Sequence record: MT661596.1
Direction: 5' to 3' (one strand)
DNA: 64,000 nt
Positions 5,573 to 58,097 of the stretch are shown in pieces; the stretch's first letter is position 1, and every line of letters starts with the position of its first letter. The notes under the pieces were generated by a model. It did no database searches and was not told the DNA's origin. It was given only the letters and a program-made list of their open reading frames with translations. A program made the position numbers and the translations under genes.

Positions 5573-8434
5573 TTAGAACTTGATATCACCAAGTCCGTCG
5601 TCTATGGGAGAAGTATCGCCATCGCCCTCACCAGTTTCATCAGAACCCCCGTCTCCGGTGGTGTTATCGGACATTTCATTCTCTGGGTCCTCACCAGTTT
5701 CTTCGAAGTCGGTAGACCCACCGACTGAAGTGCCCGCCTCGTCGCTTCCTGGTTGTCCAGACCCTGTGTCTGGTATACCTCCAGTTTCCTCACTATTTTC
5801 GCCACTGTTGGCATCGTCGTTGTCAGGTTCGTCATTAAGCACCTTATCTAGTTTAGGTTGTAAACGAGTCTTAGCTTTATTAGCAAGTTTAACAAACTCA
5901 ATAACACCATTTATTGCAGTTTCGTTATAACCAACAATAGAAGTTAAGTGGTCAACTGATTTATTACTACCATCACCAAGTTCAGACAGATAATCAAAAT
6001 GTCTGCTGTTACCCGAGTCGTGCATCCATTTACGCATGTGTGCAGACACAAGACCAGAACGGAATGAGTTATAAGCATCCTCACCACCATCAACTACTCT
6101 GGATAAGACTTCATCTGTGTAGTAATCAGTGATGATGTTTTCAGCAAATGCGCGTTCAGCTTCATAAGCACGAGAGAACTCTTCACTGTCTGTGATATCT
6201 GGAGAAGGTAATGTAACTTCTAATGAATTAAGGAAGTTTGTTAAGATTCTTGCTGCAATAGCCTCATCATCGTTTGCAACATCTGGATTGTTTTCTTTGA
6301 ATTGTCTGAGTTGCTCTTTACCACCCTTTGTAGATGGTGACCATTTTGATTTGTTCTCCATAATGGTATCAAACAACTGATTCATCAAAGGACCAGACTT
6401 ATAGGCAATCTTACGAACAAGGTCAGATACCCCAGAGCATAACTTATCCTGATTAATCATGATTTCCTTACAGAACAACGCATCGTTTTGAATGTGTTCT
6501 ACTGCAAATTTGATATCATTGTTAGGATTAATTAGTTCTGGTCTAACACCCCATTGCAAGCCAAGGAAGTTCATCAATCTATCCATCCACTCGTTATCCG
6601 GTGGAGTGATATCACGCTTCTGGTGTGACATGTCTACGTTAATTGCTGGGTAATACGCATTACCTTCGGTCTTAACGAGAACAGAAGCCGCATCCATAAT
6701 ACCACAAACATCTCGTGGGTTTTTAGCACCTATGATAGATGATAAACCTAACGTTGAGTTCATATGAGTGGAGACAATGTCTTCTATCGTCGCTTCTGGT
6801 TCATCATCATTTTCATCAAGACGAACATCAAGTGTGGTAACGTTGATAGAAGAGGCTATATTAGCTAGTGTAGAAGCTACCGTGTTAGCCATTGCCATAG
6901 ATGCAAACAAACGAGATTTATCCAACAGCGAACGACCAATACCCAAGTTATTGTAATCAAAAGCGATATACGAGATAGATTCTTCAGGTAGGTAAAGAAC
7001 CCGTGTCCTCAAGTTTCTAAGTGTACGGGTGAACATCATCATCTTAGCAGCGTTGTCAATACCCACCGTCATTGTTTGACCATAGATACCGTTAGCAAGA
7101 CGCTGTGTTAGTTCAAGCTCAAGTTCTCTTTCATACTCCTTATAGAACTCTCGCATGTTAAAATCACAGGCTTTACCTTCCCGGATTTGCCGTGCCATCT
7201 CAATGATACCTTTTGTCCCATTAATAGCTGAGTTGGTATCCTGTTTATTCTGACCCTTATCTAGGAAAAAGTTATCGTAGTTAGCTGTTCTTAGTGGGTT
7301 GCCGTTTTCATCTAAGAACACGTACGCACCAACAGTAACTTCCGGCTGTCCTGGTAAATGAGCACGTACGACACACTCTGAAGGTAACCCCATCACCAAA
7401 GCACCACCAACATTTTCACGAGTTGTTTCGTCATCACGAGGAATACTGATTGTGTCTTGTGGAACGTACTCACGCTGCTTGTACAGGTCGTTATAGATGT
7501 TTGCGTATTGTTCTGGTGTAAGACCACTAACTTGTGCTTGACCGTCGTGCTTAACCTTGTGCTTACCTTTTTGTGCACCTGAGCCAGGGTACGATTCTAG
7601 ACCACCTGTACGTCTTCTCTTAGCAATAGACGACGGGACTCGCGCATTATCAGATAGAGCTCGACGTGCGATAGCCATCTTCAATTTAGGGTATTTTAAA
7701 ATAGAGTCGTTATCTGTAAACGAAACATTACTCTCACCAGTACCGAATAAGTTATTGTCGCTCATTGTTACTGGCGTACCTTCCATGAGGTCTTCAAGAG
7801 AAGCTGTCATAATAGCGCTGCGTGTGCCACGGTCACCCAGTATGTTTCTCGGTCTGAAGTCTTTTATCTTTGTATCATACTCATCAGATAAAGCTTCCAT
7901 GGACGCACGCGTATAACCATTAATAACATTATCAAGAGATGATTCTGATAATATCGCTGTTATATATGAGCCAGTATCGAATAAAACGTCACCAAGTATT
8001 TTTGGTAGTTTGTCTGTAATTTTATAGTTGCCCTCTAGGAACTCACTAGTTATTTTAAGTAACGACGCATTTAGGTCGTTATTCTTACCTTCGTAAGACT
8101 CACTCACGTAGGACAACTCAACCGTTCTTAAATTACGTGGGGAGAGTGTTGAGGCTGTTAAAATCTGTTTAGCTCTTAATGCCCCTGGAACGCTTTCTAA
8201 GAGTTCTTTATTAGCATCTATGTTAGTGCTAGTTATCTTGCTGATAGCCTCCATCGTTGACGTGGAGACCTTACTACGCGCCTTATTATTACCGACATCT
8301 TCAGGTCGTAATGGGTTGCTGGTTTCTGGCACAAGAAGATTGATAAGAGACCGACTCAATGGGTCTTTATTTATCGTGGGTAATTTAGGTGTCGCTGTTT
8401 TTGTAACACCGCGACGATTCTTTTCTACGGCCAT
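5573..8434 (-). CDS. portal protein (phiKZ gp129-like)
   Basis: 953 aa, acidic D/E/G C-terminal tail, AGGAGA SD; divergent from the large structural gene as recalled for phiKZ-like phages. Confidence 0.7.
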   Translation of the reverse strand: MAVEKNRRGVTKTATPKLPTINKDPLSRSLINLLVPETSNPLRPEDVGNNKARSKVSTSTMEAISKITSTNIDANKELLESVPGALRAKQILTASTLSPRNLRTVELSYVSESYEGKNNDLNASLLKITSEFLEGNYKITDKLPKILGDVLFDTGSYITAILSESSLDNVINGYTRASMEALSDEYDTKIKDFRPRNILGDRGTRSAIMTASLEDLMEGTPVTMSDNNLFGTGESNVSFTDNDSILKYPKLKMAIARRALSDNARVPSSIAKRRRTGGLESYPGSGAQKGKHKVKHDGQAQVSGLTPEQYANIYNDLYKQREYVPQDTISIPRDDETTRENVGGALVMGLPSECVVRAHLPGQPEVTVGAYVFLDENGNPLRTANYDNFFLDKGQNKQDTNSAINGTKGIIEMARQIREGKACDFNMREFYKEYERELELELTQRLANGIYGQTMTVGIDNAAKMMMFTRTLRNLRTRVLYLPEESISYIAFDYNNLGIGRSLLDKSRLFASMAMANTVASTLANIASSINVTTLDVRLDENDDEPEATIEDIVSTHMNSTLGLSSIIGAKNPRDVCGIMDAASVLVKTEGNAYYPAINVDMSHQKRDITPPDNEWMDRLMNFLGLQWGVRPELINPNNDIKFAVEHIQNDALFCKEIMINQDKLCSGVSDLVRKIAYKSGPLMNQLFDTIMENKSKWSPSTKGGKEQLRQFKENNPDVANDDEAIAARILTNFLNSLEVTLPSPDITDSEEFSRAYEAERAFAENIITDYYTDEVLSRVVDGGEDAYNSFRSGLVSAHMRKWMHDSGNSRHFDYLSELGDGSNKSVDHLTSIVGYNETAINGVIEFVKLANKAKTRLQPKLDKVLNDEPDNDDANSGENSEETGGIPDTGSGQPGSDEAGTSVGGSTDFEETGEDPENEMSDNTTGDGGSDETGEGDGDTSPIDDGLGDIKF

Positions 8435-51911: not shown

Positions 51912-52298
51912 ATGACCATAGGTTCGTTATTTATTCTATTAATTGCTTTTACAATAAGTTATCTAAAGTGGTCATTTAAACGTTACATTACCAGAGGTAG
52001 CTTAGAATCGATACTTATAAATACCATTGAGCATAAGGTTAATGAACACCTCAGTAGACTAACAGCTCACGGGAAAACCATTTCAATTACTGAATTTAAT
52101 AACTTAATTAATAATGTGGCAAAAACAGAGTATGGTAAGTTCTGGTTAATCTCTGGTCTTTACTGTAAACTTAGTACCTATGTATATAAGTCAGGTAAGT
52201 TATCACTTGATGAAACCGTATCTGTGTCTATAACGGCAGGGTCAACGACAACAACTTACGATATTGTTTGCCACCCAACACAACTAATTCTAGAGTAA
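51912..52298 (+). CDS. N-terminally membrane-anchored protein
   Basis: 128 aa, AAGGA SD, N-terminal hydrophobic segment. Confidence 0.72.
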   Translation: MTIGSLFILLIAFTISYLKWSFKRYITRGSLESILINTIEHKVNEHLSRLTAHGKTISITEFNNLINNVAKTEYGKFWLISGLYCKLSTYVYKSGKLSLDETVSVSITAGSTTTTYDIVCHPTQLILE

Positions 52299-52308
52299 GG
52301 TAATCACC

Positions 52309-52641
52309 ATGGCAATTGAAATTGTATTTAAAAACACGCTTAACTTAAAACCTTGTGAATGCGAAGGTAAACACAAAGGTCGTTTTATTGTTGACCTTAA
52401 TGTTAGACGTTTTATGGGTGGTGAAACTCGTCCTCAAGTAGGGCTTCGTTTATCCAGCACTAGTGAAGAAAATATTAAAGCGATGGTTGACAAAGGACTA
52501 TCCTTTACCGACGGTATGTCTCACAACGTCTCATCTTACACAAATGGTATTGGTGGCGGCGAGATTATCATTGAACTGTATTCCGATAAAGAATACGACA
52601 AACTTATTAATCTATTAAACGAATGGAGTAATGATGAGTAA
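52309..52641 (+). CDS. hypothetical protein
   Basis: 110 aa, AAGGT SD. Confidence 0.72.
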   Translation: MAIEIVFKNTLNLKPCECEGKHKGRFIVDLNVRRFMGGETRPQVGLRLSSTSEENIKAMVDKGLSFTDGMSHNVSSYTNGIGGGEIIIELYSDKEYDKLINLLNEWSNDE

Positions 52642-52816
52642 AGACTTATCTGCGTATTTAAAACCACCTGTTAAACAAGAGGATGAATTCTCTTTTCTTG
52701 ATAATTTGGATTTAGATGGAGCAGCTGATAAACTGCGAGAACGCATCCTTCAAGATGAAGAAACTAACAAGGTAGAAGCATCTAATGTCTGTGAAGGCGG
52801 TGGTTGCACTATTTAA
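52631..52816 (+). CDS. small acidic protein ending in an NrdA-like CxxxxC tail
   Basis: 61 aa, GGAG SD; C-terminus VCEGGGCTI. Confidence 0.75.
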   Translation: MMSKDLSAYLKPPVKQEDEFSFLDNLDLDGAADKLRERILQDEETNKVEASNVCEGGGCTI

Positions 52817-52817
52817 C

Positions 52818-52875
52818 ATCGGCATAAAGGGTAGCCCATTTGGGCTACCCTAGCTATGCAACTTCTTTTTTTTTG
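52818..52875. terminator. bidirectional stem-loop, near-identical to 5512
   Basis: GGGTAGCCC-ATTT-GGGCTACCC, GGCATA/TATGC arms, T run. Confidence 0.85.
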
Positions 52876-54210
52876 TTACATCTGTTTGATTGCTAAGTCA
52901 CACACTTTTAAAAGCTCTACACAAACGCGATGAATTGCGTTAGGTAAGCTAAACCCAAGTGATGCAACAGATACCTGAGATGACGATAAAGCTGTACCTG
53001 CATTACGTTTAACGTATAGCATACCTTTCTCTTCACCCTTACCTGTTTGTCCGTCACCCACTTTCATAACAGCAGATTGCTCAGTTAATATACGTTTAAT
53101 ACGTGCCGTTAGCGGTGTGTAGCCAGTAAGGTTGCGTTGTAACACAATGAGTAAATCAAGCGCTTTAGTTACGTCAGACAGAATCTGCTTAACCTGAGGT
53201 ACTGTTAATGTCCCAGTGTATTGGGTTTTACCTGATTCAGCGCCAATGCGTTTGAATGCAAGACGGTTCTTACCTAATGCAATTAAGTCGGCAGAGATTT
53301 CGTGAGCGGAATTACCACCTGTGGTTTTCCACATAACTTCAACCAGTGCAAAAGAACCTAATGTTGCAGGGCTGCGACGGATAAGTTTCTTCTCATCATC
53401 ACTTACATTGATTGTAGCAATTTTAGATGGTTTCCATTTAAAGGAATCTACAATCTTGCGAGCTTCTTCAAGTGTTTTTGCTTTAACTAGTTTCTCAACA
53501 CCAGCAACGATATCGCTTGAATTATCTGTCAGGTTTTCTTTCCAGAAGCTGGTAGATAATGTAGAAACAAGCTCTGTAAAAGTTTTAACATCAGCAGGTA
53601 AATTAGCTGATGGCTTACCGCCAGCAACGGTTAACATTTTAGATTTACGAGATACAGTTGCAGAACCTGATTTACCGGCGAGTTGCTTTTCAAGCTTCTC
53701 TACTTTAGCTTTTAACGCCCCACCCGTAGTCAGGTATTTATCGAGTGTACCTTTGATTTTCTGCATAACGTTGGCACCGCCTTCCATCATGCGTTCAAAG
53801 ATATTACCTTTTGCGGTATGTAACGCTTCTAACCCGCTCTGCAACAGACCAATCATTTGGTCGTTATCCATTGACTCCAACCCGGCGGTTGTAATCTGTT
53901 TTGTATAACCGACGTTGCTCAGCGCTTCATTAGCCAGATGAGTTACAATAGCGACCGCTTGCATGTTTGGTGCACCTGATTCAATCAGTGCTTCCATAGA
54001 CCCGGCGATAACAGCAACAGCATCAGCAGCACCCGCTAACTCCTCAACGTCTGCTGTTGCTTCAACAACAGTCAGTTCTTCGTGAGGTAGTTCATGTGTG
54101 ACTTCAAGAATGGCTTCCATCACTTCTTCATTATCTACGTTTGCGGGACGAAGTGTATCAACAGGGTCTAAGCTTTCTAAACCAGCAGACAAAACTAAAT
54201 TCAATGACAT
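52876..54210 (-). CDS. internal head protein (phiKZ gp93/gp162-type family) with cleavable propeptide
   Basis: acidic N-terminal propeptide with AGLES x2, SMEA and SGLEA, then a basic mature region; GAGGT SD. Confidence 0.72.
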   Translation of the reverse strand: MSLNLVLSAGLESLDPVDTLRPANVDNEEVMEAILEVTHELPHEELTVVEATADVEELAGAADAVAVIAGSMEALIESGAPNMQAVAIVTHLANEALSNVGYTKQITTAGLESMDNDQMIGLLQSGLEALHTAKGNIFERMMEGGANVMQKIKGTLDKYLTTGGALKAKVEKLEKQLAGKSGSATVSRKSKMLTVAGGKPSANLPADVKTFTELVSTLSTSFWKENLTDNSSDIVAGVEKLVKAKTLEEARKIVDSFKWKPSKIATINVSDDEKKLIRRSPATLGSFALVEVMWKTTGGNSAHEISADLIALGKNRLAFKRIGAESGKTQYTGTLTVPQVKQILSDVTKALDLLIVLQRNLTGYTPLTARIKRILTEQSAVMKVGDGQTGKGEEKGMLYVKRNAGTALSSSQVSVASLGFSLPNAIHRVCVELLKVCDLAIKQM

Positions 54211-54234
54211 TTTATACCTCTTAGGAGTTTTCTT

Positions 54235-54813
54235 GTGGCGAGTTTATATTTTTATTACAGTGCTATGAACGCGGGCAAAACCACTGCGTTATTACAAGCA
54301 GCTTACAACTATGAAGAGCGCAAAATGCGCGTTCTTACACTCAAGCCAAAAATTGATGATAGAGAGTCTACATCAAAAATTGTATCTCGAATAGGGTTAT
54401 CTCGGGACACCCTACTATTTGAACCGTCGTGTAACCTATACTATTTAGTTAACCAAATAGAACCAGGTGATAAACCGCATGTTGTTCTTGTTGATGAAGC
54501 CCAGTTTCTGACAAAAGAGCAGGTTATTGAGCTTGGCAGAGTTGTCGATGATTTTGACATCCCTGTGTTATGCTACGGTTTAAGAACAGATTTCATGAGT
54601 AATTTGTTTGAGGGTAGTGCTGCATTATTGGGTGAAGCCGATAAGCTAATTTCTCTTAAAACTATATGCCATTGTGGTCGAGCTGCACATAAAGTTCTTC
54701 GTATCGATGAAGATGGTAACGTCGTTCGTCATGGTGAGTCAGTTGAAATAGGTGGTAACGACCGCTATGTCTCTGTATGCCGTAAACATTGGCGAGCTGG
54801 TGAAATTTGTTAG
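54235..54813 (+). CDS. tdk: thymidine kinase
   Basis: SAMNAGKTT, VDEAQF, YGLRTDF, Zn ligands CHC...CRKH. Confidence 0.95.
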   Translation: MASLYFYYSAMNAGKTTALLQAAYNYEERKMRVLTLKPKIDDRESTSKIVSRIGLSRDTLLFEPSCNLYYLVNQIEPGDKPHVVLVDEAQFLTKEQVIELGRVVDDFDIPVLCYGLRTDFMSNLFEGSAALLGEADKLISLKTICHCGRAAHKVLRIDEDGNVVRHGESVEIGGNDRYVSVCRKHWRAGEIC

Positions 54814-54824
54814 AATAAAATAAT

Positions 54825-54860
54825 AATAACCCAGGACAATGTCCTGGGTGTTATGCCGAC
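54825..54860 (+). terminator. stem-loop, TTATGCCG family
   Basis: ACCCAGGAC-AAT-GTCCTGGGT then GTTATGCCG. Confidence 0.72.
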
Positions 54861-54873
54861 TATTTTATTTCAT

Positions 54874-54892
54874 ACCTATATTACCTATATGT
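54874..54892 (+). promoter_or_regulatory. putative early promoter
   Basis: ACCTATATTA-CCTA-TATGT; contains TATATTAC, the reported phiKZ early element. Confidence 0.78.
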
Positions 54893-54930
54893 CACATTAA
54901 CATATAAAGAATAACAAAAAAGGATTGGGT

Positions 54931-55290
54931 ATGGATTTAGGTGTTATTGACGCCACTGATACGCTAGGCGCATTGTACAGCAAATATGGAATTAATAATG
55001 TCATTAGCGCGGGAGTAACAAGGCATATAGGGTCATTGGTAATTCGATATAAAGTAGATATATCAGATGACTACCAAGACTCCGTGTTTAAGGAGATGTG
55101 TAACATAGCTAACCATTATGGGTATAATAATGATGTCAACTTATGTAGCTGTCTTGTAGAGGTATATAGCACTTTATATCGTTGTATGAAAACATATTTA
55201 ACTGGATTACATAACCGGTCTCTGATGATAACTAAAGTGATAGCAACAAACACAACGTATAAATTAGGACTTATGTCAGTCGCGTTATAA
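54931..55290 (+). CDS. hypothetical protein
   Basis: ATG 54931 after AAGGA. Confidence 0.72.
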   Translation: MDLGVIDATDTLGALYSKYGINNVISAGVTRHIGSLVIRYKVDISDDYQDSVFKEMCNIANHYGYNNDVNLCSCLVEVYSTLYRCMKTYLTGLHNRSLMITKVIATNTTYKLGLMSVAL

Positions 55291-55338: not shown

Positions 55339-55782
55339 ATGGACACCATAAATGTCAGTGTTAATTTTAAACTTACTTCTAAGGAACTCCCGGAAGGTGG
55401 TAGCTTAGTAGGTGTTTGTAATTACCCGTGTTATATCACGACAGAAAGGTTTAAGGGTTTAATTAATGAACTGGTTGATGGGCTCAATCATTATTTAAAC
55501 TCACACGATGTTGAGTTCACAAAAACAATCTCGTTAGAGGAGGAACCACACGTACTTATTGTGATTCCGGTTGAATTGGATTATACCGATTTACCCGCAT
55601 CCACAGAGCCGTTAGGAGCCGTACCTAAAAACATGAACAGAACTATCAACACTTGCATGAAGTGTGTTCATGTTATACTGGAGAAGCTTTTAGAAGACCC
55701 TACCACGGTCATAACACAAACAGAGCAAGAAACTAATGTGTACAAAGATATTGGAACTAATCTTACAATGCAGCTTGGATGA
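55339..55782 (+). CDS. hypothetical protein
   Basis: 147 aa, GAGGT SD. Confidence 0.75.
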   Translation: MDTINVSVNFKLTSKELPEGGSLVGVCNYPCYITTERFKGLINELVDGLNHYLNSHDVEFTKTISLEEEPHVLIVIPVELDYTDLPASTEPLGAVPKNMNRTINTCMKCVHVILEKLLEDPTTVITQTEQETNVYKDIGTNLTMQLG

Positions 55783-56365
55783 TAACGGGACTAACCTACA
55801 GTGTTCTTATTACGAAGTAGCTGATGCTGAGTTGTTTGCGGATGATGTCTTAGAGCAAATTATTCAACGCGTTAAAAATAAAGACGTCACTCTACCCTCG
55901 CTTGTACATTCTTTTATTAACGATATAAACAACTCGGAACGGGAACTGGTTAGTATTGCTAACATACATCGATTCGATAACCCCAAAGAAGGTCAATCGT
56001 GGATGGATGAACAAATAAATAAATACCTCGGGGAATCGTGTCCGAGAACCTGTGCAAATGTAGACCATATTGCCAGACGTATAAGAAAACTGAGGGCGAT
56101 GATATTAATAAATTCATCTATCTATTACGATTTAAATGACTCAATAATCACCGACCATGATTGGGATAGAATAGCCTACTCGTTAGTGGCATTGCAGACA
56201 AAGTACCCTCAACTCGTCGACAAAATAAATTACTTTGATAAAGAATTTGCCGACTTTGATGGTTCTACAGGTTATAACCTACCTTATAGAACATCAATGA
56301 TATTCGGCATTGCACAACGTATATTAAATCACCATTACGAATTAAAAGGAATAACTCATGAATAA
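55736..56365 (+). CDS. protein with stand-alone NAD-dependent DNA ligase domain Ia-like C-terminus
   Basis: IYYDLNDSIITDHDWDRIAYSLVALQTKYP resembles LigA YY..D.P.ISDAEYD.L...L..LE..YP; no KxDG motif; start uncertain. Confidence 0.68.
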   Translation: MCTKILELILQCSLDDNGTNLQCSYYEVADAELFADDVLEQIIQRVKNKDVTLPSLVHSFINDINNSERELVSIANIHRFDNPKEGQSWMDEQINKYLGESCPRTCANVDHIARRIRKLRAMILINSSIYYDLNDSIITDHDWDRIAYSLVALQTKYPQLVDKINYFDKEFADFDGSTGYNLPYRTSMIFGIAQRILNHHYELKGITHE

Positions 56366-58097
56366 CGGCAGACGTATTAACATAGATAACGGTTGGAGCA
56401 TTAACATAACCGAGACATTTGTTTCATTAGTAAATCCTGTTGGTGACACCGTCTCTGTGGTCAACGCCGACCAATTCAATTCTGGTTACCCAACTATGAA
56501 CGGTTTATTAAGTTCTAGTGGAGTTGAAGTTGAGCAAGGTGTCAGCGTGCCAGAGGGATTGATTGCACTTGCTATTATGTTAGACATCGCTGTTCGTCAT
56601 CAAGCGGGTGTCAGTGTAAATGAACAATCTACAGAAGAAACTCTTTCTGTTATATCCATGCTGTGGGCATTCATTGAATCTATCTCAGATAACACTTTAG
56701 ATAACTGGCCTGTGTCTTTTAACTATAGTCTATCCAGTGGTTATATAACACCAATCCGTATTAATATCGACGATAAATTTGATGATAACACAGATGTGTC
56801 TTTTAACGGGTTTGTTACCATCGACGGTTATGACGAGGTTCTAGATATAGTAATCGACGTCTATGGTACCTCTAACGCGCTCGGGGAAACTATTGATGGG
56901 TTATTAACCAACTTCGATAATGACTCAATTGCAGAGAGTGATGAACCATTACATTCATTAGATGATACCGATACTGCTAACCTAAAACCTATTGTTACAA
57001 TAAAGGCCCCTAGTGGTGTTAGCGTTAGCACTTATAGTGAAACAGGTTATTATAAAGCTGATTTGATTAAATTCAATATCGGAAATAAAACTTGTTTAGA
57101 AAAGCGCTCAACTAATGGCTCATTTAATTTACTTGAAACGATTATTACGGTATGGCACGAGTTAGCGCTCCGCTTGCCCTCTCCAGAAATCATAGCAGTC
57201 TCTGATGTCGATGCTGCAACGTTAATGGCAGGTATTTCAGAAATCGTTAATCAGTTTGTTTCTGATGTCGATGCTGTACTTAGTTTAGAGCATGGTATCA
57301 GTGTTGAATACGTTGAGCGTGTTAGACACACATTAGCGTGCCGTGTTGTTGCAAGCTATGCCGAAGAATCAGGTTGTGTTGATTTAAGTTATGAATTCAG
57401 TGAGATTAACACACTGGGTGACTACACAAAATCCATCACCTTCCAAAGAAACACTTTGGATTGGAAACCACTAACGCCTACTCAAATGACGGATGCAGTT
57501 GGTCGTGAGTTAGGTGTTGTCTTTGGACATACTGATGAGCAACTAGCTATTCGTAGTCTGCTAACTGAATCTGGCGCTGAGGTGCATGCTGTTGCCTGTG
57601 TCACTTCATCATTAGGTATCGGAAAAGATAATCAACTTGTTTATCGTAGTAAAGAAGATATGGCGTTCTTCATGGCCCACACCGATGAGTGCCCTGTTAT
57701 AATGGGGTTAGCTACTTTTGAATCTATCGGTAAACCACTTAAAAACAGACGTAATATTGTTCTAACCTCAAATCCCGATGAGCTTAACAAGAAATACGAA
57801 AGTTACGGTACGTTTACGATTATCTTTGTATCTAATCTTGTTGACGCTGTTGCTCATGCTGTTAAGTTTGCTGATGAACAAACGCCTATTTGTATCATTG
57901 GTGGTGAATCCGTTTATAACCAATTCCTTCAATATACAGACAAGTGTTTTCTCACTGTAGCAAATATTGATGTTGATTGCGATAGACATTTCCCTAACCT
58001 GACCTCGCAGCACTGGACAACCACACCAGTGGCTATCGATGAAAAACTTAAAACAGATTCTGATAAACATGTCAGAATGATGTTTGAACGTAAATAA
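56358..58097 (+). CDS. dihydrofolate reductase fused to a ~410-aa unknown acidic N-terminal region
   Basis: C-terminal GIGKDNQL..SKEDMAFF..VIMG..TFESIGKPLKNRRNIVL..IIGGESVY..DCDRHFP. Confidence 0.88.
   Translation: MNNGRRINIDNGWSINITETFVSLVNPVGDTVSVVNADQFNSGYPTMNGLLSSSGVEVEQGVSVPEGLIALAIMLDIAVRHQAGVSVNEQSTEETLSVISMLWAFIESISDNTLDNWPVSFNYSLSSGYITPIRINIDDKFDDNTDVSFNGFVTIDGYDEVLDIVIDVYGTSNALGETIDGLLTNFDNDSIAESDEPLHSLDDTDTANLKPIVTIKAPSGVSVSTYSETGYYKADLIKFNIGNKTCLEKRSTNGSFNLLETIITVWHELALRLPSPEIIAVSDVDAATLMAGISEIVNQFVSDVDAVLSLEHGISVEYVERVRHTLACRVVASYAEESGCVDLSYEFSEINTLGDYTKSITFQRNTLDWKPLTPTQMTDAVGRELGVVFGHTDEQLAIRSLLTESGAEVHAVACVTSSLGIGKDNQLVYRSKEDMAFFMAHTDECPVIMGLATFESIGKPLKNRRNIVLTSNPDELNKKYESYGTFTIIFVSNLVDAVAHAVKFADEQTPICIIGGESVYNQFLQYTDKCFLTVANIDVDCDRHFPNLTSQHWTTTPVAIDEKLKTDSDKHVRMMFERK

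What the first reader, a model, noticed from the sequence alone, without database searches (positions are those of the whole stretch)
52631..52816. Free-standing mimic of the ribonucleotide reductase C-terminal redox arm
Seen: a 61-aa acidic, likely disordered protein ending NVCEGGGCTI-COOH. Established: E. coli NrdA ends DGCESGACKI, and that CxxxxC pair shuttles electrons from thioredoxin/glutaredoxin to the active site. Spacing and terminal position are the same here. It lies near tdk. Inference: a trans-acting reductant shuttle for RNR, a competitor that hijacks host Trx/Grx, or a decoy.
Basis: partly seen in the sequence, partly recalled or inferred. Interest (0 to 1): 0.65.

Follow-up and report, generated by a model that had tools for sequence, protein, structure and literature searches.

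The report
Free-standing ribonucleotide reductase tail mimic
A giant Proteus phage with no ribonucleotide reductase of its own encodes a conserved 60-residue acidic peptide whose end copies the two-cysteine electron-shuttling tail of its host's enzyme, one member of a large undescribed family of such loose tails in phages and some bacteria.

Summary
Window 52631/52634-52816 (+) of Proteus phage 10 encodes a 60-61 aa acidic protein (pI 4.3) ending CEGGGCTI. It is under purifying selection: dN/dS is 0.14-0.24, and the tail codons change almost only synonymously.

The likeness to NrdA extends beyond the cysteine spacing. The last 19 residues match the C-terminal arm of Proteus NrdA (10/19). Sister proteins in other jumbo phages match it 14/17.

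The same tail is a portable module. It sits on true NrdAs, on over 130 clusters of small acidic proteins, on N4 gp49 (an Acb4 anti-CBASS sponge), and on chromosomal mini-genes in Neisseria (between iscS and iscU) and Moraxella.

None of 51 phage genomes or contigs carrying a detached tail has NrdA. None of 36 tested has NrdB, NrdD, thioredoxin or glutaredoxin. Any partner must therefore be host-encoded.

The N-terminal half loosely resembles the NrdB C-terminal tail. This is clear in some relatives and only suggestive here.

Function is untested. I favour engagement of the host class Ia RNR redox cycle; whether it helps or blocks the enzyme is open. I found no paper describing this. This scan has already reported the same family on other phage DNA.

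The parts
52634..52816 (+). Coding sequence of the tail-mimic protein (60 aa; 61 aa if the ATG at 52631 is used), stop TAA 52814-52816
   Evidence: Homologues at 60-97% identity. dN/dS 0.14-0.24.
52623..52626 (+). GGAG ribosome-binding site, 4 and 7 nt before the two candidate ATGs
   Evidence: Sequence read directly.
52640..52714 (+). Residues 4-28 (KDLSAYL...FLDNLDL): acidic/hydrophobic segment that aligns without gaps to the last 25 residues of NrdB, including the SSYL tyrosine position. Suggestive only.
   Evidence: Ungapped 25-column PSSM against own shuffles, p=0.0097. An HMM of the same NrdB tails is not better than shuffles, p=0.87. The 8-mer PSSM gives p about 0.10.
52712..52765 (+). 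Residues 28-45: the only predicted helix, serving as linker
   Evidence: AlphaFold2, pLDDT 72-80. The equivalent helix is predicted in the SA002-type fusion.
52757..52813 (+). Residues 43-61: copy of the NrdA C-terminal redox arm, ending C-E-G-G-G-C-T-I. Cys54 is codon 52790-52792 and Cys59 is codon 52805-52807.
   Evidence: BLASTP against the Proteus faecis NrdA C-terminus: 10/19, E 8e-4. Invariant C54, G57, C59, I61. 0-2 non-synonymous against 5-8 synonymous changes in the last 14 codons.
52822..52859 (.). Strong hairpin (-25.8 kcal/mol) between the convergent tail gene and the internal-head-protein gene; probable two-way terminator. A T9 run follows at 52866-52874.
   Evidence: ViennaRNA fold. 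The simple terminator scan did not flag it because the T run is not adjacent.
52309..52641 (+). Upstream 110-aa gene overlapping the start by 8-11 nt. Context only, not part of the module.
   Evidence: Conserved in L102 but replaced by an unrelated 147-aa gene in L101. No family match.
54235..54813 (+). Thymidine kinase. Context: nucleotide-metabolism neighbourhood, together with the DHFR fusion at 56358-58097.
   Evidence: PF00265 3e-50. PF00186 4e-32.

Best explanation
The gene makes a small, mostly flexible acidic protein. Its C-terminal 17-19 residues derive from, or copy, the dithiol arm of enterobacterial class Ia NrdA. The phage has no RNR, thioredoxin or glutaredoxin, so the arm can only meet the host partners of the real arm: reduced thioredoxin/glutaredoxin-1 and the oxidised Cys225-Cys462 active site of host NrdA. 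My preferred mechanism is this. The peptide docks on host NrdA, possibly through its NrdB-tail-like N-terminal half. It then acts as an extra, trans-acting redox arm that carries electrons from Trx/Grx to the active site. This would keep host RNR turning over for a phage that depends wholly on it for dNTPs. Shown: the gene is real and selected, its end is homologous to the NrdA arm, it is modular, and it is confined to RNR-less phages. Inferred: binding to NrdA/Trx/Grx, disulfide exchange, and above all the sign of the effect (stimulation rather than inhibition).
For: 1. Tail homology:
- 10/19 identity to the Proteus NrdA arm.
- 14/17 for the sister protein P0010.
- Proteus, Providencia and Morganella NrdA end ...EEVVE-x-x-DSDCEGGACKI.
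- The identical ending CEGGGCKI occurs on a true phage NrdA (L012).

2. Invariant Cys pair and terminal Ile in 16 divergent relatives. Purifying selection on the gene.

3. Distribution:
- 0 of 15 plus 0 of 36 phage genomes or contigs with a detached tail carry PF02867. The positive control was found.
- At least 5000 of 50,697 phage records carry an NrdA.
- NrdB, NrdD, Trx and Grx are absent from 36 tail-carrying genomes tested.

4. No IMG/VR contig holds both an NrdA tail and a free tail.

5. C-x4-C is the minority tail type typical of E. coli-like class Ia enzymes (PMC9669993). It matches the hosts of these phages.

6. A solved Grx1 complex with the NrdA tail peptide exists (1QFN). A free tail peptide is therefore a competent glutaredoxin partner.

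7. NrdB-tail-like motifs are enriched in the N-terminal halves of the family: 7 of 65 at p<0.01, for example SEFDDFEL and LDFDDFEL.

8. Neighbourhoods are rich in dNTP-metabolism genes: TK and DHFR here, dCMP deaminase in L017 and JA29.
Against:
- A tethered native arm has a very high local concentration, so it is unclear that a free arm adds anything.
- An NrdB-tail mimic would be expected to compete with NrdB and inhibit the enzyme.
- Bacteria with free tails (Neisseria, Moraxella, Thalassolituus) keep a fully tailed NrdA, so the peptide is not needed to complement a tail-less enzyme.
- The Neisseria copy sits in the isc (Fe-S assembly) operon, not next to nrdAB.
- For the window protein itself the NrdB-like signal is weak.
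- RNR absence may be partly a clade trait of phiKZ-like and N4-like phages; the 51 genomes are not independent.
Confidence: 0.4

Rival explanations
1. Inhibitor or decoy of host RNR, working like Sml1. The NrdB-tail-like half would occupy the NrdB docking groove of NrdA. The arm copy would compete with the native arm for the active site or for Trx/Grx. Together they would throttle host dNTP synthesis or host replication.
For: - Some relatives carry near-perfect NrdB C-terminal motifs.
- From my own knowledge, C-terminal R2 peptides are classical competitive RNR inhibitors, and yeast Sml1 blocks the arm step.
- In Neisseria the gene would be co-regulated with the isc operon, which could tie DNA synthesis to iron-sulfur status.
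- Bacteria keep both a tailed NrdA and the free tail, which fits a regulator better than a spare part.
Against: - The peptide occurs only in phages without their own RNR. Blocking the host enzyme would starve those phages.
- From memory, N4 needs host RNR.
- The NrdB-like motif is internal and lacks a free carboxylate.
- The motif is weak in the window protein.
Confidence: 0.27
2. A general Trx/Grx-coupled dithiol peptide or docking tag not specific to RNR. The arm would make any carrier a client of thioredoxin or glutaredoxin. It could reduce other targets (for example IscS/IscU persulfides) or tether cargo such as the Acb4 sponge of N4 gp49 to the redox machinery.
For: - The tail is attached to unrelated domains: Acb4/PF13876 and at least four other N-terminal domains without a family.
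- Only 2 of 80 sampled Acb4 homologues carry the tail, so it is an add-on.
- Bacterial copies lie between iscS and iscU, or beside flavin reductases, an old-yellow-enzyme gene and an Rrf2 regulator.
Against: - The similarity to NrdA extends about 10 residues upstream of the cysteines. A generic dithiol would not need this.
- The strict absence from RNR-encoding phages points to RNR.
Confidence: 0.2
3. A ribosomally made peptide precursor (acidic leader plus Cys-bearing core) or a metal-binding peptide. On this view the likeness to NrdA is convergent.
For: The nearest ESM Atlas cluster by features is 'putative FxLD family lantipeptide', score 0.85. The protein has an acidic leader-like N-terminus containing F-x-F-L-D.
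Against: - A score of 0.85 is within the range that shuffled proteins reach.
- No modifying enzyme turned up among the neighbours scanned against Pfam or in the homologous loci; a few nearby small ORFs were not scanned.
- Most family cores (CEGGACKI) lack the Ser/Thr needed for lanthionine.
- 14/17 identity to NrdA arms is hard to get by convergence.
Confidence: 0.06
4. A functionless remnant of a deleted nrdA gene.
For: The tail is clearly NrdA-derived and the phage lacks nrdA.
Against: - dN/dS is 0.14-0.24 at saturating dS, with tail codons changing synonymously.
- Synteny is conserved in diverged relatives.
- Over 130 protein clusters across many phage types and bacteria.
- The N-terminal part is unrelated to the NrdA barrel.
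- The gene has its own RBS and terminator.
Confidence: 0.03

Closest known systems
C-terminal redox arm of class Ia RNR large subunit (E. coli NrdA Cys754/Cys759)
   Same: - Same ending, C-[DE]-[SG]-G-[GA]-C-x-I-COOH.
- Same acidic flexible lead-in.
- 10/19 identity to the host-genus arm and 14/17 for sister proteins.
   Different: - It is not attached to any RNR barrel.
- It is encoded by a phage with no RNR.
- Its N-terminal two thirds are unrelated to NrdA.
NrdB C-terminal tail and the peptide inhibitors derived from it
   Same: An acidic/aromatic motif of the D-D-[LF]-x-D-F-[ED]-L type occurs in many family members. The window protein has S-A-Y-L and F-L-D-N-L-D-L at NrdB-like spacing.
   Different: The motif is internal rather than C-terminal. 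For the window protein it is statistically weak.
Split class II RNR NrdJa/NrdJb (tail-bearing part on a separate chain)
   Same: It is a precedent for the cysteine-pair tail lying on a polypeptide separate from the catalytic core (PMC9669993).
   Different: NrdJb is a large structural part of the enzyme encoded beside NrdJa. Here only the arm exists, without any enzyme gene.
Sml1 / Spd1, small disordered RNR inhibitors of yeasts (from my own knowledge)
   Same: Small intrinsically disordered proteins aimed at the large subunit; Sml1 interferes with the C-terminal arm step.
   Different: No sequence relation. They are eukaryotic and carry no cysteine-pair copy of the arm. No bacterial or phage counterpart has been described.
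Acb4 anti-CBASS sponge family (PF13876; N4 gp49)
   Same: N4 gp49 and its relatives carry the same tail at their C-terminus.
   Different: The window protein has no Acb4 domain. Most Acb4 proteins have no tail.

Membership tests
NrdA C-terminal redox arm (class Ia, C-x4-C type) | Two Cys spaced C-x4-C, with the second Cys three residues from the C-terminus | tested here: met
   The protein ends CEGGGCTI. E. coli NrdA ends CESGACKI and Proteus NrdA ends CEGGACKI.
NrdA C-terminal redox arm (class Ia, C-x4-C type) | Sequence homology of the arm beyond the cysteines | tested here: met
   10/19, E 8e-4. Sister protein 14/17, E 5e-7.
NrdA C-terminal redox arm (class Ia, C-x4-C type) | Covalently joined to the RNR catalytic barrel (PF02867) | tested here: not met
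   No Pfam domain in the protein. No PF02867 anywhere in the 223-kb phage genome.
NrdA C-terminal redox arm (class Ia, C-x4-C type) | Disulfide exchange with Trx/Grx and with the NrdA active-site pair | not testable with these tools
   This needs biochemistry.
NrdB C-terminal tail | Consensus ...SSYL-x12-DD[LF]x[DN]F[EDQ]L at the extreme C-terminus | tested here: inconclusive
   The motif is internal here. 8-mer PSSM p about 0.10. 25-mer ungapped p 0.0097. HMM p 0.87. Clear in some relatives.
Acb4 sponge (PF13876) | Match to the PF13876 core | tested here: not met
   No Pfam hit for the window protein. N4-like tail carriers do match.
Thioredoxin / glutaredoxin fold proteins | Trx fold with a CxxC active site | tested here: not met
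   No Pfam or NCBIfam hit. The AlphaFold2 model has one helix and coil. The spacing is C-x4-C.
Lanthipeptide / RiPP precursor | Modifying enzyme genes next to the precursor | tested here: not met
   Neighbours scanned are hypothetical proteins, a phiKZ internal head protein, TK and DHFR; some small nearby ORFs were not scanned. The Atlas lead scores only 0.85.
Anti-phage defence proteins (PADLOC) | Match to a defence-system model | tested here: not met
   No hit.

The most novel reading that the evidence does not exclude
These peptides are two-headed copies of both RNR subunit tails: an NrdB docking tail plus the NrdA redox arm. They would form an undescribed class of small regulators that plug directly into class Ia RNR. 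RNR-less phages (jumbo phages, N4-like phages) would use them to take control of host dNTP synthesis. Neisseria and Moraxella would use them to couple RNR to iron-sulfur and redox status. They would be the first bacterial and viral counterparts of Sml1-type RNR regulators.
Probability: 0.35. Interest if true: 0.85.

Novelty: new variant of a known kind. Interest (0 to 1): 0.74.

Why it matters
- RNR is the bottleneck of DNA-precursor supply and a drug target. How phages without their own RNR secure dNTPs is poorly understood.
- A family of about 50-residue peptides that copy the enzyme's own tails would be a new, minimal way of manipulating RNR.
- Such peptides would be ready-made probes or inhibitor leads for enterobacterial and Neisseria RNR.
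- The family would also explain an unexplained extension on the Acb4 sponges of N4-like phages.
- It is directly testable with existing E. coli NrdAB, Trx and Grx assays.
- The chromosomal copy inside the Neisseria isc operon hints at an unknown link between Fe-S assembly and RNR or thiol redox control.

Tried and rejected
No result either way.
- Pfam, PHROGs, NCBIfam and PADLOC scans of the protein: nothing meaningful.
- PDB phmmer with the peptide: nothing.
- The idea that the upstream overlapping ORF (52309-52641) is the missing N-domain of the SA002-type fusion, joined by a frameshift: rejected. The only similarity is a 15-residue match, and the upstream gene is replaced by an unrelated one in L101.
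- The idea that bacteria with free tails have a tail-less NrdA: rejected.
- Full-length NrdB-tail HMM against the window protein: no better than shuffles.
- Fold of the SA002-type N-terminal domain: confident model, but no PDB match by Foldseek.
- RNA evidence of expression: no RNA run holds the locus; read laying was not used.
- A 2x2 test of tail against RNR within Acb4-bearing phages: abandoned, because the sampled Acb4 phages are mostly about 40-kb temperate phages with neither feature.
- Literature searches for N4 gp49 function, the tail sequence, and phage proteins acting on host RNR: no description found.

Full report
**Identity of the window.** Bases 52000-55000 are 100% identical to Proteus phage 10 (MT661596.1, 223,209 bp; host Proteus mirabilis), and window coordinates equal record coordinates. 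The phage is phiKZ-like: the convergent neighbour at 52876-54210 (-) is a phiKZ internal head protein (PF12699, 2e-42).

**The observation**
- GenBank annotates it from the second ATG (52634; QMP24052.1, hypothetical protein). The homologue P0005 starts at the equivalent Met, so 60 aa is the likelier product.
- A GGAG lies 4-7 nt upstream. A hairpin of -25.8 kcal/mol follows the stop.
- The protein has pI 4.27 and net charge -7.5, and its only two cysteines are those of the tail.
- AlphaFold2, using a 16-sequence family alignment, gives one helix (residues 28-45) and a low-confidence coil for the last 16 residues.
- E. coli NrdA ends ...IQDDGCESGACKI.
- Thymidine kinase lies 1.4 kb downstream, and a DHFR fusion protein follows at 56358-58097.
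- Only 1 of 837 open frames of at least 30 aa in the window ends C-x4-C-x2.

**It is a real, selected gene**
- Close relatives at 60-97% identity exist on independent metagenome contigs.
- They share the same gene order: variable upstream gene, tail gene, internal head protein on the other strand, TK.
- Pairwise dN/dS is 0.14-0.24, with dS of 0.8-1.5.
- In the last 14 codons there are 5-8 synonymous but only 0-2 non-synonymous differences.
- The upstream overlapping ORF is not part of the unit. It is replaced by an unrelated gene in L101, where the two genes do not overlap.

**The tail is an NrdA arm, not just a C-x4-C**
- A scan of bacterial genomes showed that NrdA of Proteus, Providencia, Morganella, Xenorhabdus and Photorhabdus ends ...DLEEVVE-x-x-DSDCEGGACKI.
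- The window protein matches the last 19 residues of Proteus faecis NrdA at 10/19 (E 8e-4 for the pair).
- The sister protein of Erwinia jumbo phages (P0010) matches at 14/17 (E 5e-7).
- A genuine 759-aa phage NrdA ends in CEGGGCKI, the same GGG variant (L012).
- According to PMC9669993, most class I RNRs use CXXC. C-x4-C is a minority type exemplified by E. coli, which is the type found in the hosts of these phages.

**The tail is a portable module.** Three pattern scans of IMG/VR for the tail plus a stop codon gave 91 contigs. Every match was at a protein C-terminus. The carriers fall into four groups:
- True NrdAs of 750-790 aa.
- Small acidic proteins of 26-86 aa in many jumbo phages and some 40-110-kb phages.
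- Fusions to other N-terminal domains: SA002-type proteins of about 160 aa, and 123-, 263- and 296-aa proteins with no family match.
- N4 gp49 itself and its relatives in N4-like and G7C-like phages. These belong to PF13876.

PF13876 is the Acb4 anti-CBASS sponge family (bioRxiv 10.1101/2024.12.30.630793). That paper notes that several homologues have unexplained extensions. Only 2 of 80 sampled Acb4 homologues carry the tail, so it is an add-on to the sponge.

A profile of 16 small members retrieved 137 protein clusters. In the alignment only C54, G57, C59 and I61 are invariant. Tail variants in relatives (CESGACSI, CESGACEI, CEGGACKI, CDGGGCKI, CDGGGCII) stay within the range seen in NrdA.

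**Distribution against RNR**
- PF02867 (class I/II large subunit) is absent from Proteus phage 10.
- It is absent from 14 other tail-carrying phage genomes.
- It is absent from a further 36 contigs, 23 of them at least 90% complete.
- The search found the NrdA of the control contig L012.
- NrdB, NrdD, thioredoxin and glutaredoxin are likewise absent from 36 such genomes.
- By contrast, at least 5000 of 50,697 phage records encode an NrdA, many of them Escherichia, Salmonella and Klebsiella phages.
- No contig carried both an NrdA tail and a free tail.

These genomes are not independent, but judging by protein type and genome size they represent more than ten different phage groups. Any partner of the arm must therefore be host-encoded.

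**The N-terminal half**
- NrdB of the relevant bacteria ends ...SSYL-x12-DD[LF]-x-[DN]-F-[EDQ]-L.
- I built a PSSM of the last 8 NrdB residues and scanned the tail-less parts of 65 non-redundant family members. It gave 12 at p<0.05 and 7 at p<0.01 against their own shuffles, where 3.3 and 0.65 are expected. Striking cases include SEFDDFEL and LDFDDFEL.
- For the window protein the best 8-mer (SFLDNLDL) gives p about 0.10.
- An ungapped 25-residue comparison picks residues 4-28, which places S-A-Y-L on the NrdB SSYL (Tyr356) position, with p=0.0097.
- A HMMER model of the same tails is no better than shuffles.
- I therefore treat NrdB-tail mimicry as established for part of the family and only suggestive here. 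I noticed the alignment before I tested it, which weakens the p-value.

**Bacterial members**
- The profile search also found chromosomal copies. One is a 42-aa protein conserved across Neisseria species; it is annotated as 69 aa in N. meningitidis.
- It lies between iscS and iscU, in the order iscR-iscS-X-iscU-iscA-hscB.
- A 50-aa protein occurs in Moraxella, next to old-yellow-enzyme genes and two genes from an Rrf2 regulator.
- A 71-aa protein occurs in Thalassolituus, directly after a flavodoxin/FAD/NAD diflavin reductase.
- These bacteria keep a fully tailed NrdA ending C[AV]GGACK[IL]. The free tail is therefore not a replacement for a lost arm.

**Interpretation.** Four things are shown: a selected small protein, homology of its end to the NrdA arm, modularity of the arm, and restriction to RNR-less phages. 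The rest is inference. The only known partners of the NrdA arm are Trx, Grx1 and the NrdA active site, and a solved Grx1 complex with the tail peptide exists (1QFN).
- I favour engagement of the host class Ia RNR redox cycle, acting as a trans-acting arm that supports the host enzyme (0.40). My reason is that these phages depend on host RNR.
- An Sml1-like inhibitor or decoy is the main rival (0.27). The NrdB-like motif and the coexistence with tailed NrdA in bacteria favour it.
- A general Trx/Grx-coupled dithiol shuttle or docking tag is third (0.20). The isc context and the Acb4 fusion favour it.
- A RiPP or metal-peptide reading (0.06) and a dead nrdA remnant (0.03) are unlikely.
- Recent work shows that phage NrdAB triggers DRT2, DRT4 and DRT9 defences by raising dNTPs (bioRxiv 10.64898/2026.10.27.754916; PMC13434031). 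That gives a possible reason for phages to exploit host RNR rather than bring their own, but this link is speculation.

**Novelty.** I found no curated family and no paper describing detached RNR tails. After reaching this reading I looked at the scan's own notes. At least nine earlier reports on other phage DNA describe the same family and reach similar conclusions. They are not independent evidence. New in this report:
- The 17-19-residue match to the arm of the host's own bacterial family (Morganellaceae).
- The quantified NrdB-tail test.
- The wide RNR/Trx/Grx absence tally.
- The Acb4 sampling.

Noticed in passing
L105/L106 about 8082-8210 (Neisseria meningitidis chromosome): A 42-aa acidic protein ending DDGCEGGACKI is encoded between iscS and iscU in the isc operon. 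It is conserved across many Neisseria species and is annotated, if at all, as a 69-aa hypothetical protein.
   Followed up: partly
L108/L109 8001-8153 (Moraxella); L181 1783-1998 (Thalassolituus maritimus): Chromosomal free-tail genes lie beside redox genes. In Moraxella these are old-yellow-enzyme, luciferase-like monooxygenase and Rrf2 regulator genes. In Thalassolituus it is a flavodoxin/FAD/NAD diflavin reductase.
   Followed up: partly
L022 1085-1459 (= phage N4 gp49, EF056009.1): N4 gp49 is an Acb4-family (PF13876) protein carrying a 30-residue extension that ends in the NrdA tail. RefSeq labels it DUF2829, and pharokka labels the Mimir124 homologue 'anti-CRISPR'.
   Followed up: partly
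window 56358-58097 (+): A 579-aa protein has DHFR only in residues 409-575. The 400-residue N-terminal part has no Pfam match.
   Followed up: no
window 55736-56365 (+): A 209-aa protein consists of an unknown N-terminal part plus a stand-alone NAD+-binding domain Ia of DNA ligase (PF22745, 1e-28). It has no ligase catalytic core.
   Followed up: no
L002 3683-4174 (Salmonella phage SA002) and L006 2750-3244: These are fusion proteins. A confidently folded 100-residue alpha/beta domain (pLDDT about 90) with no PDB match by Foldseek precedes a full homologue of the window protein.
   Followed up: partly
L057 6331-6831; L121 1321-3818: In L057, an NrdA C-terminal fragment follows what looks like the end of an intein (...VVHN|T). 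In L121, the nrdA of Psychrosphaera algicola appears frameshifted near its 3' end, so the tail falls in another frame; this may be an assembly error.
   Followed up: no
L025 1094-3199: In a 17-kb viral contig, a 44-aa tail protein sits between two genes. By eye these look like a low-molecular-weight phosphatase/ArsC-like gene and a metallophosphatase, followed by a PP-loop (PAPS-reductase-like) gene. None of the three was checked with a family search.
   Followed up: no
window 54235-54813 (+): The thymidine kinase frame opens at GTG 54235, and the Pfam match starts at residue 2 of that frame. GenBank starts the gene at 54265.
   Followed up: no
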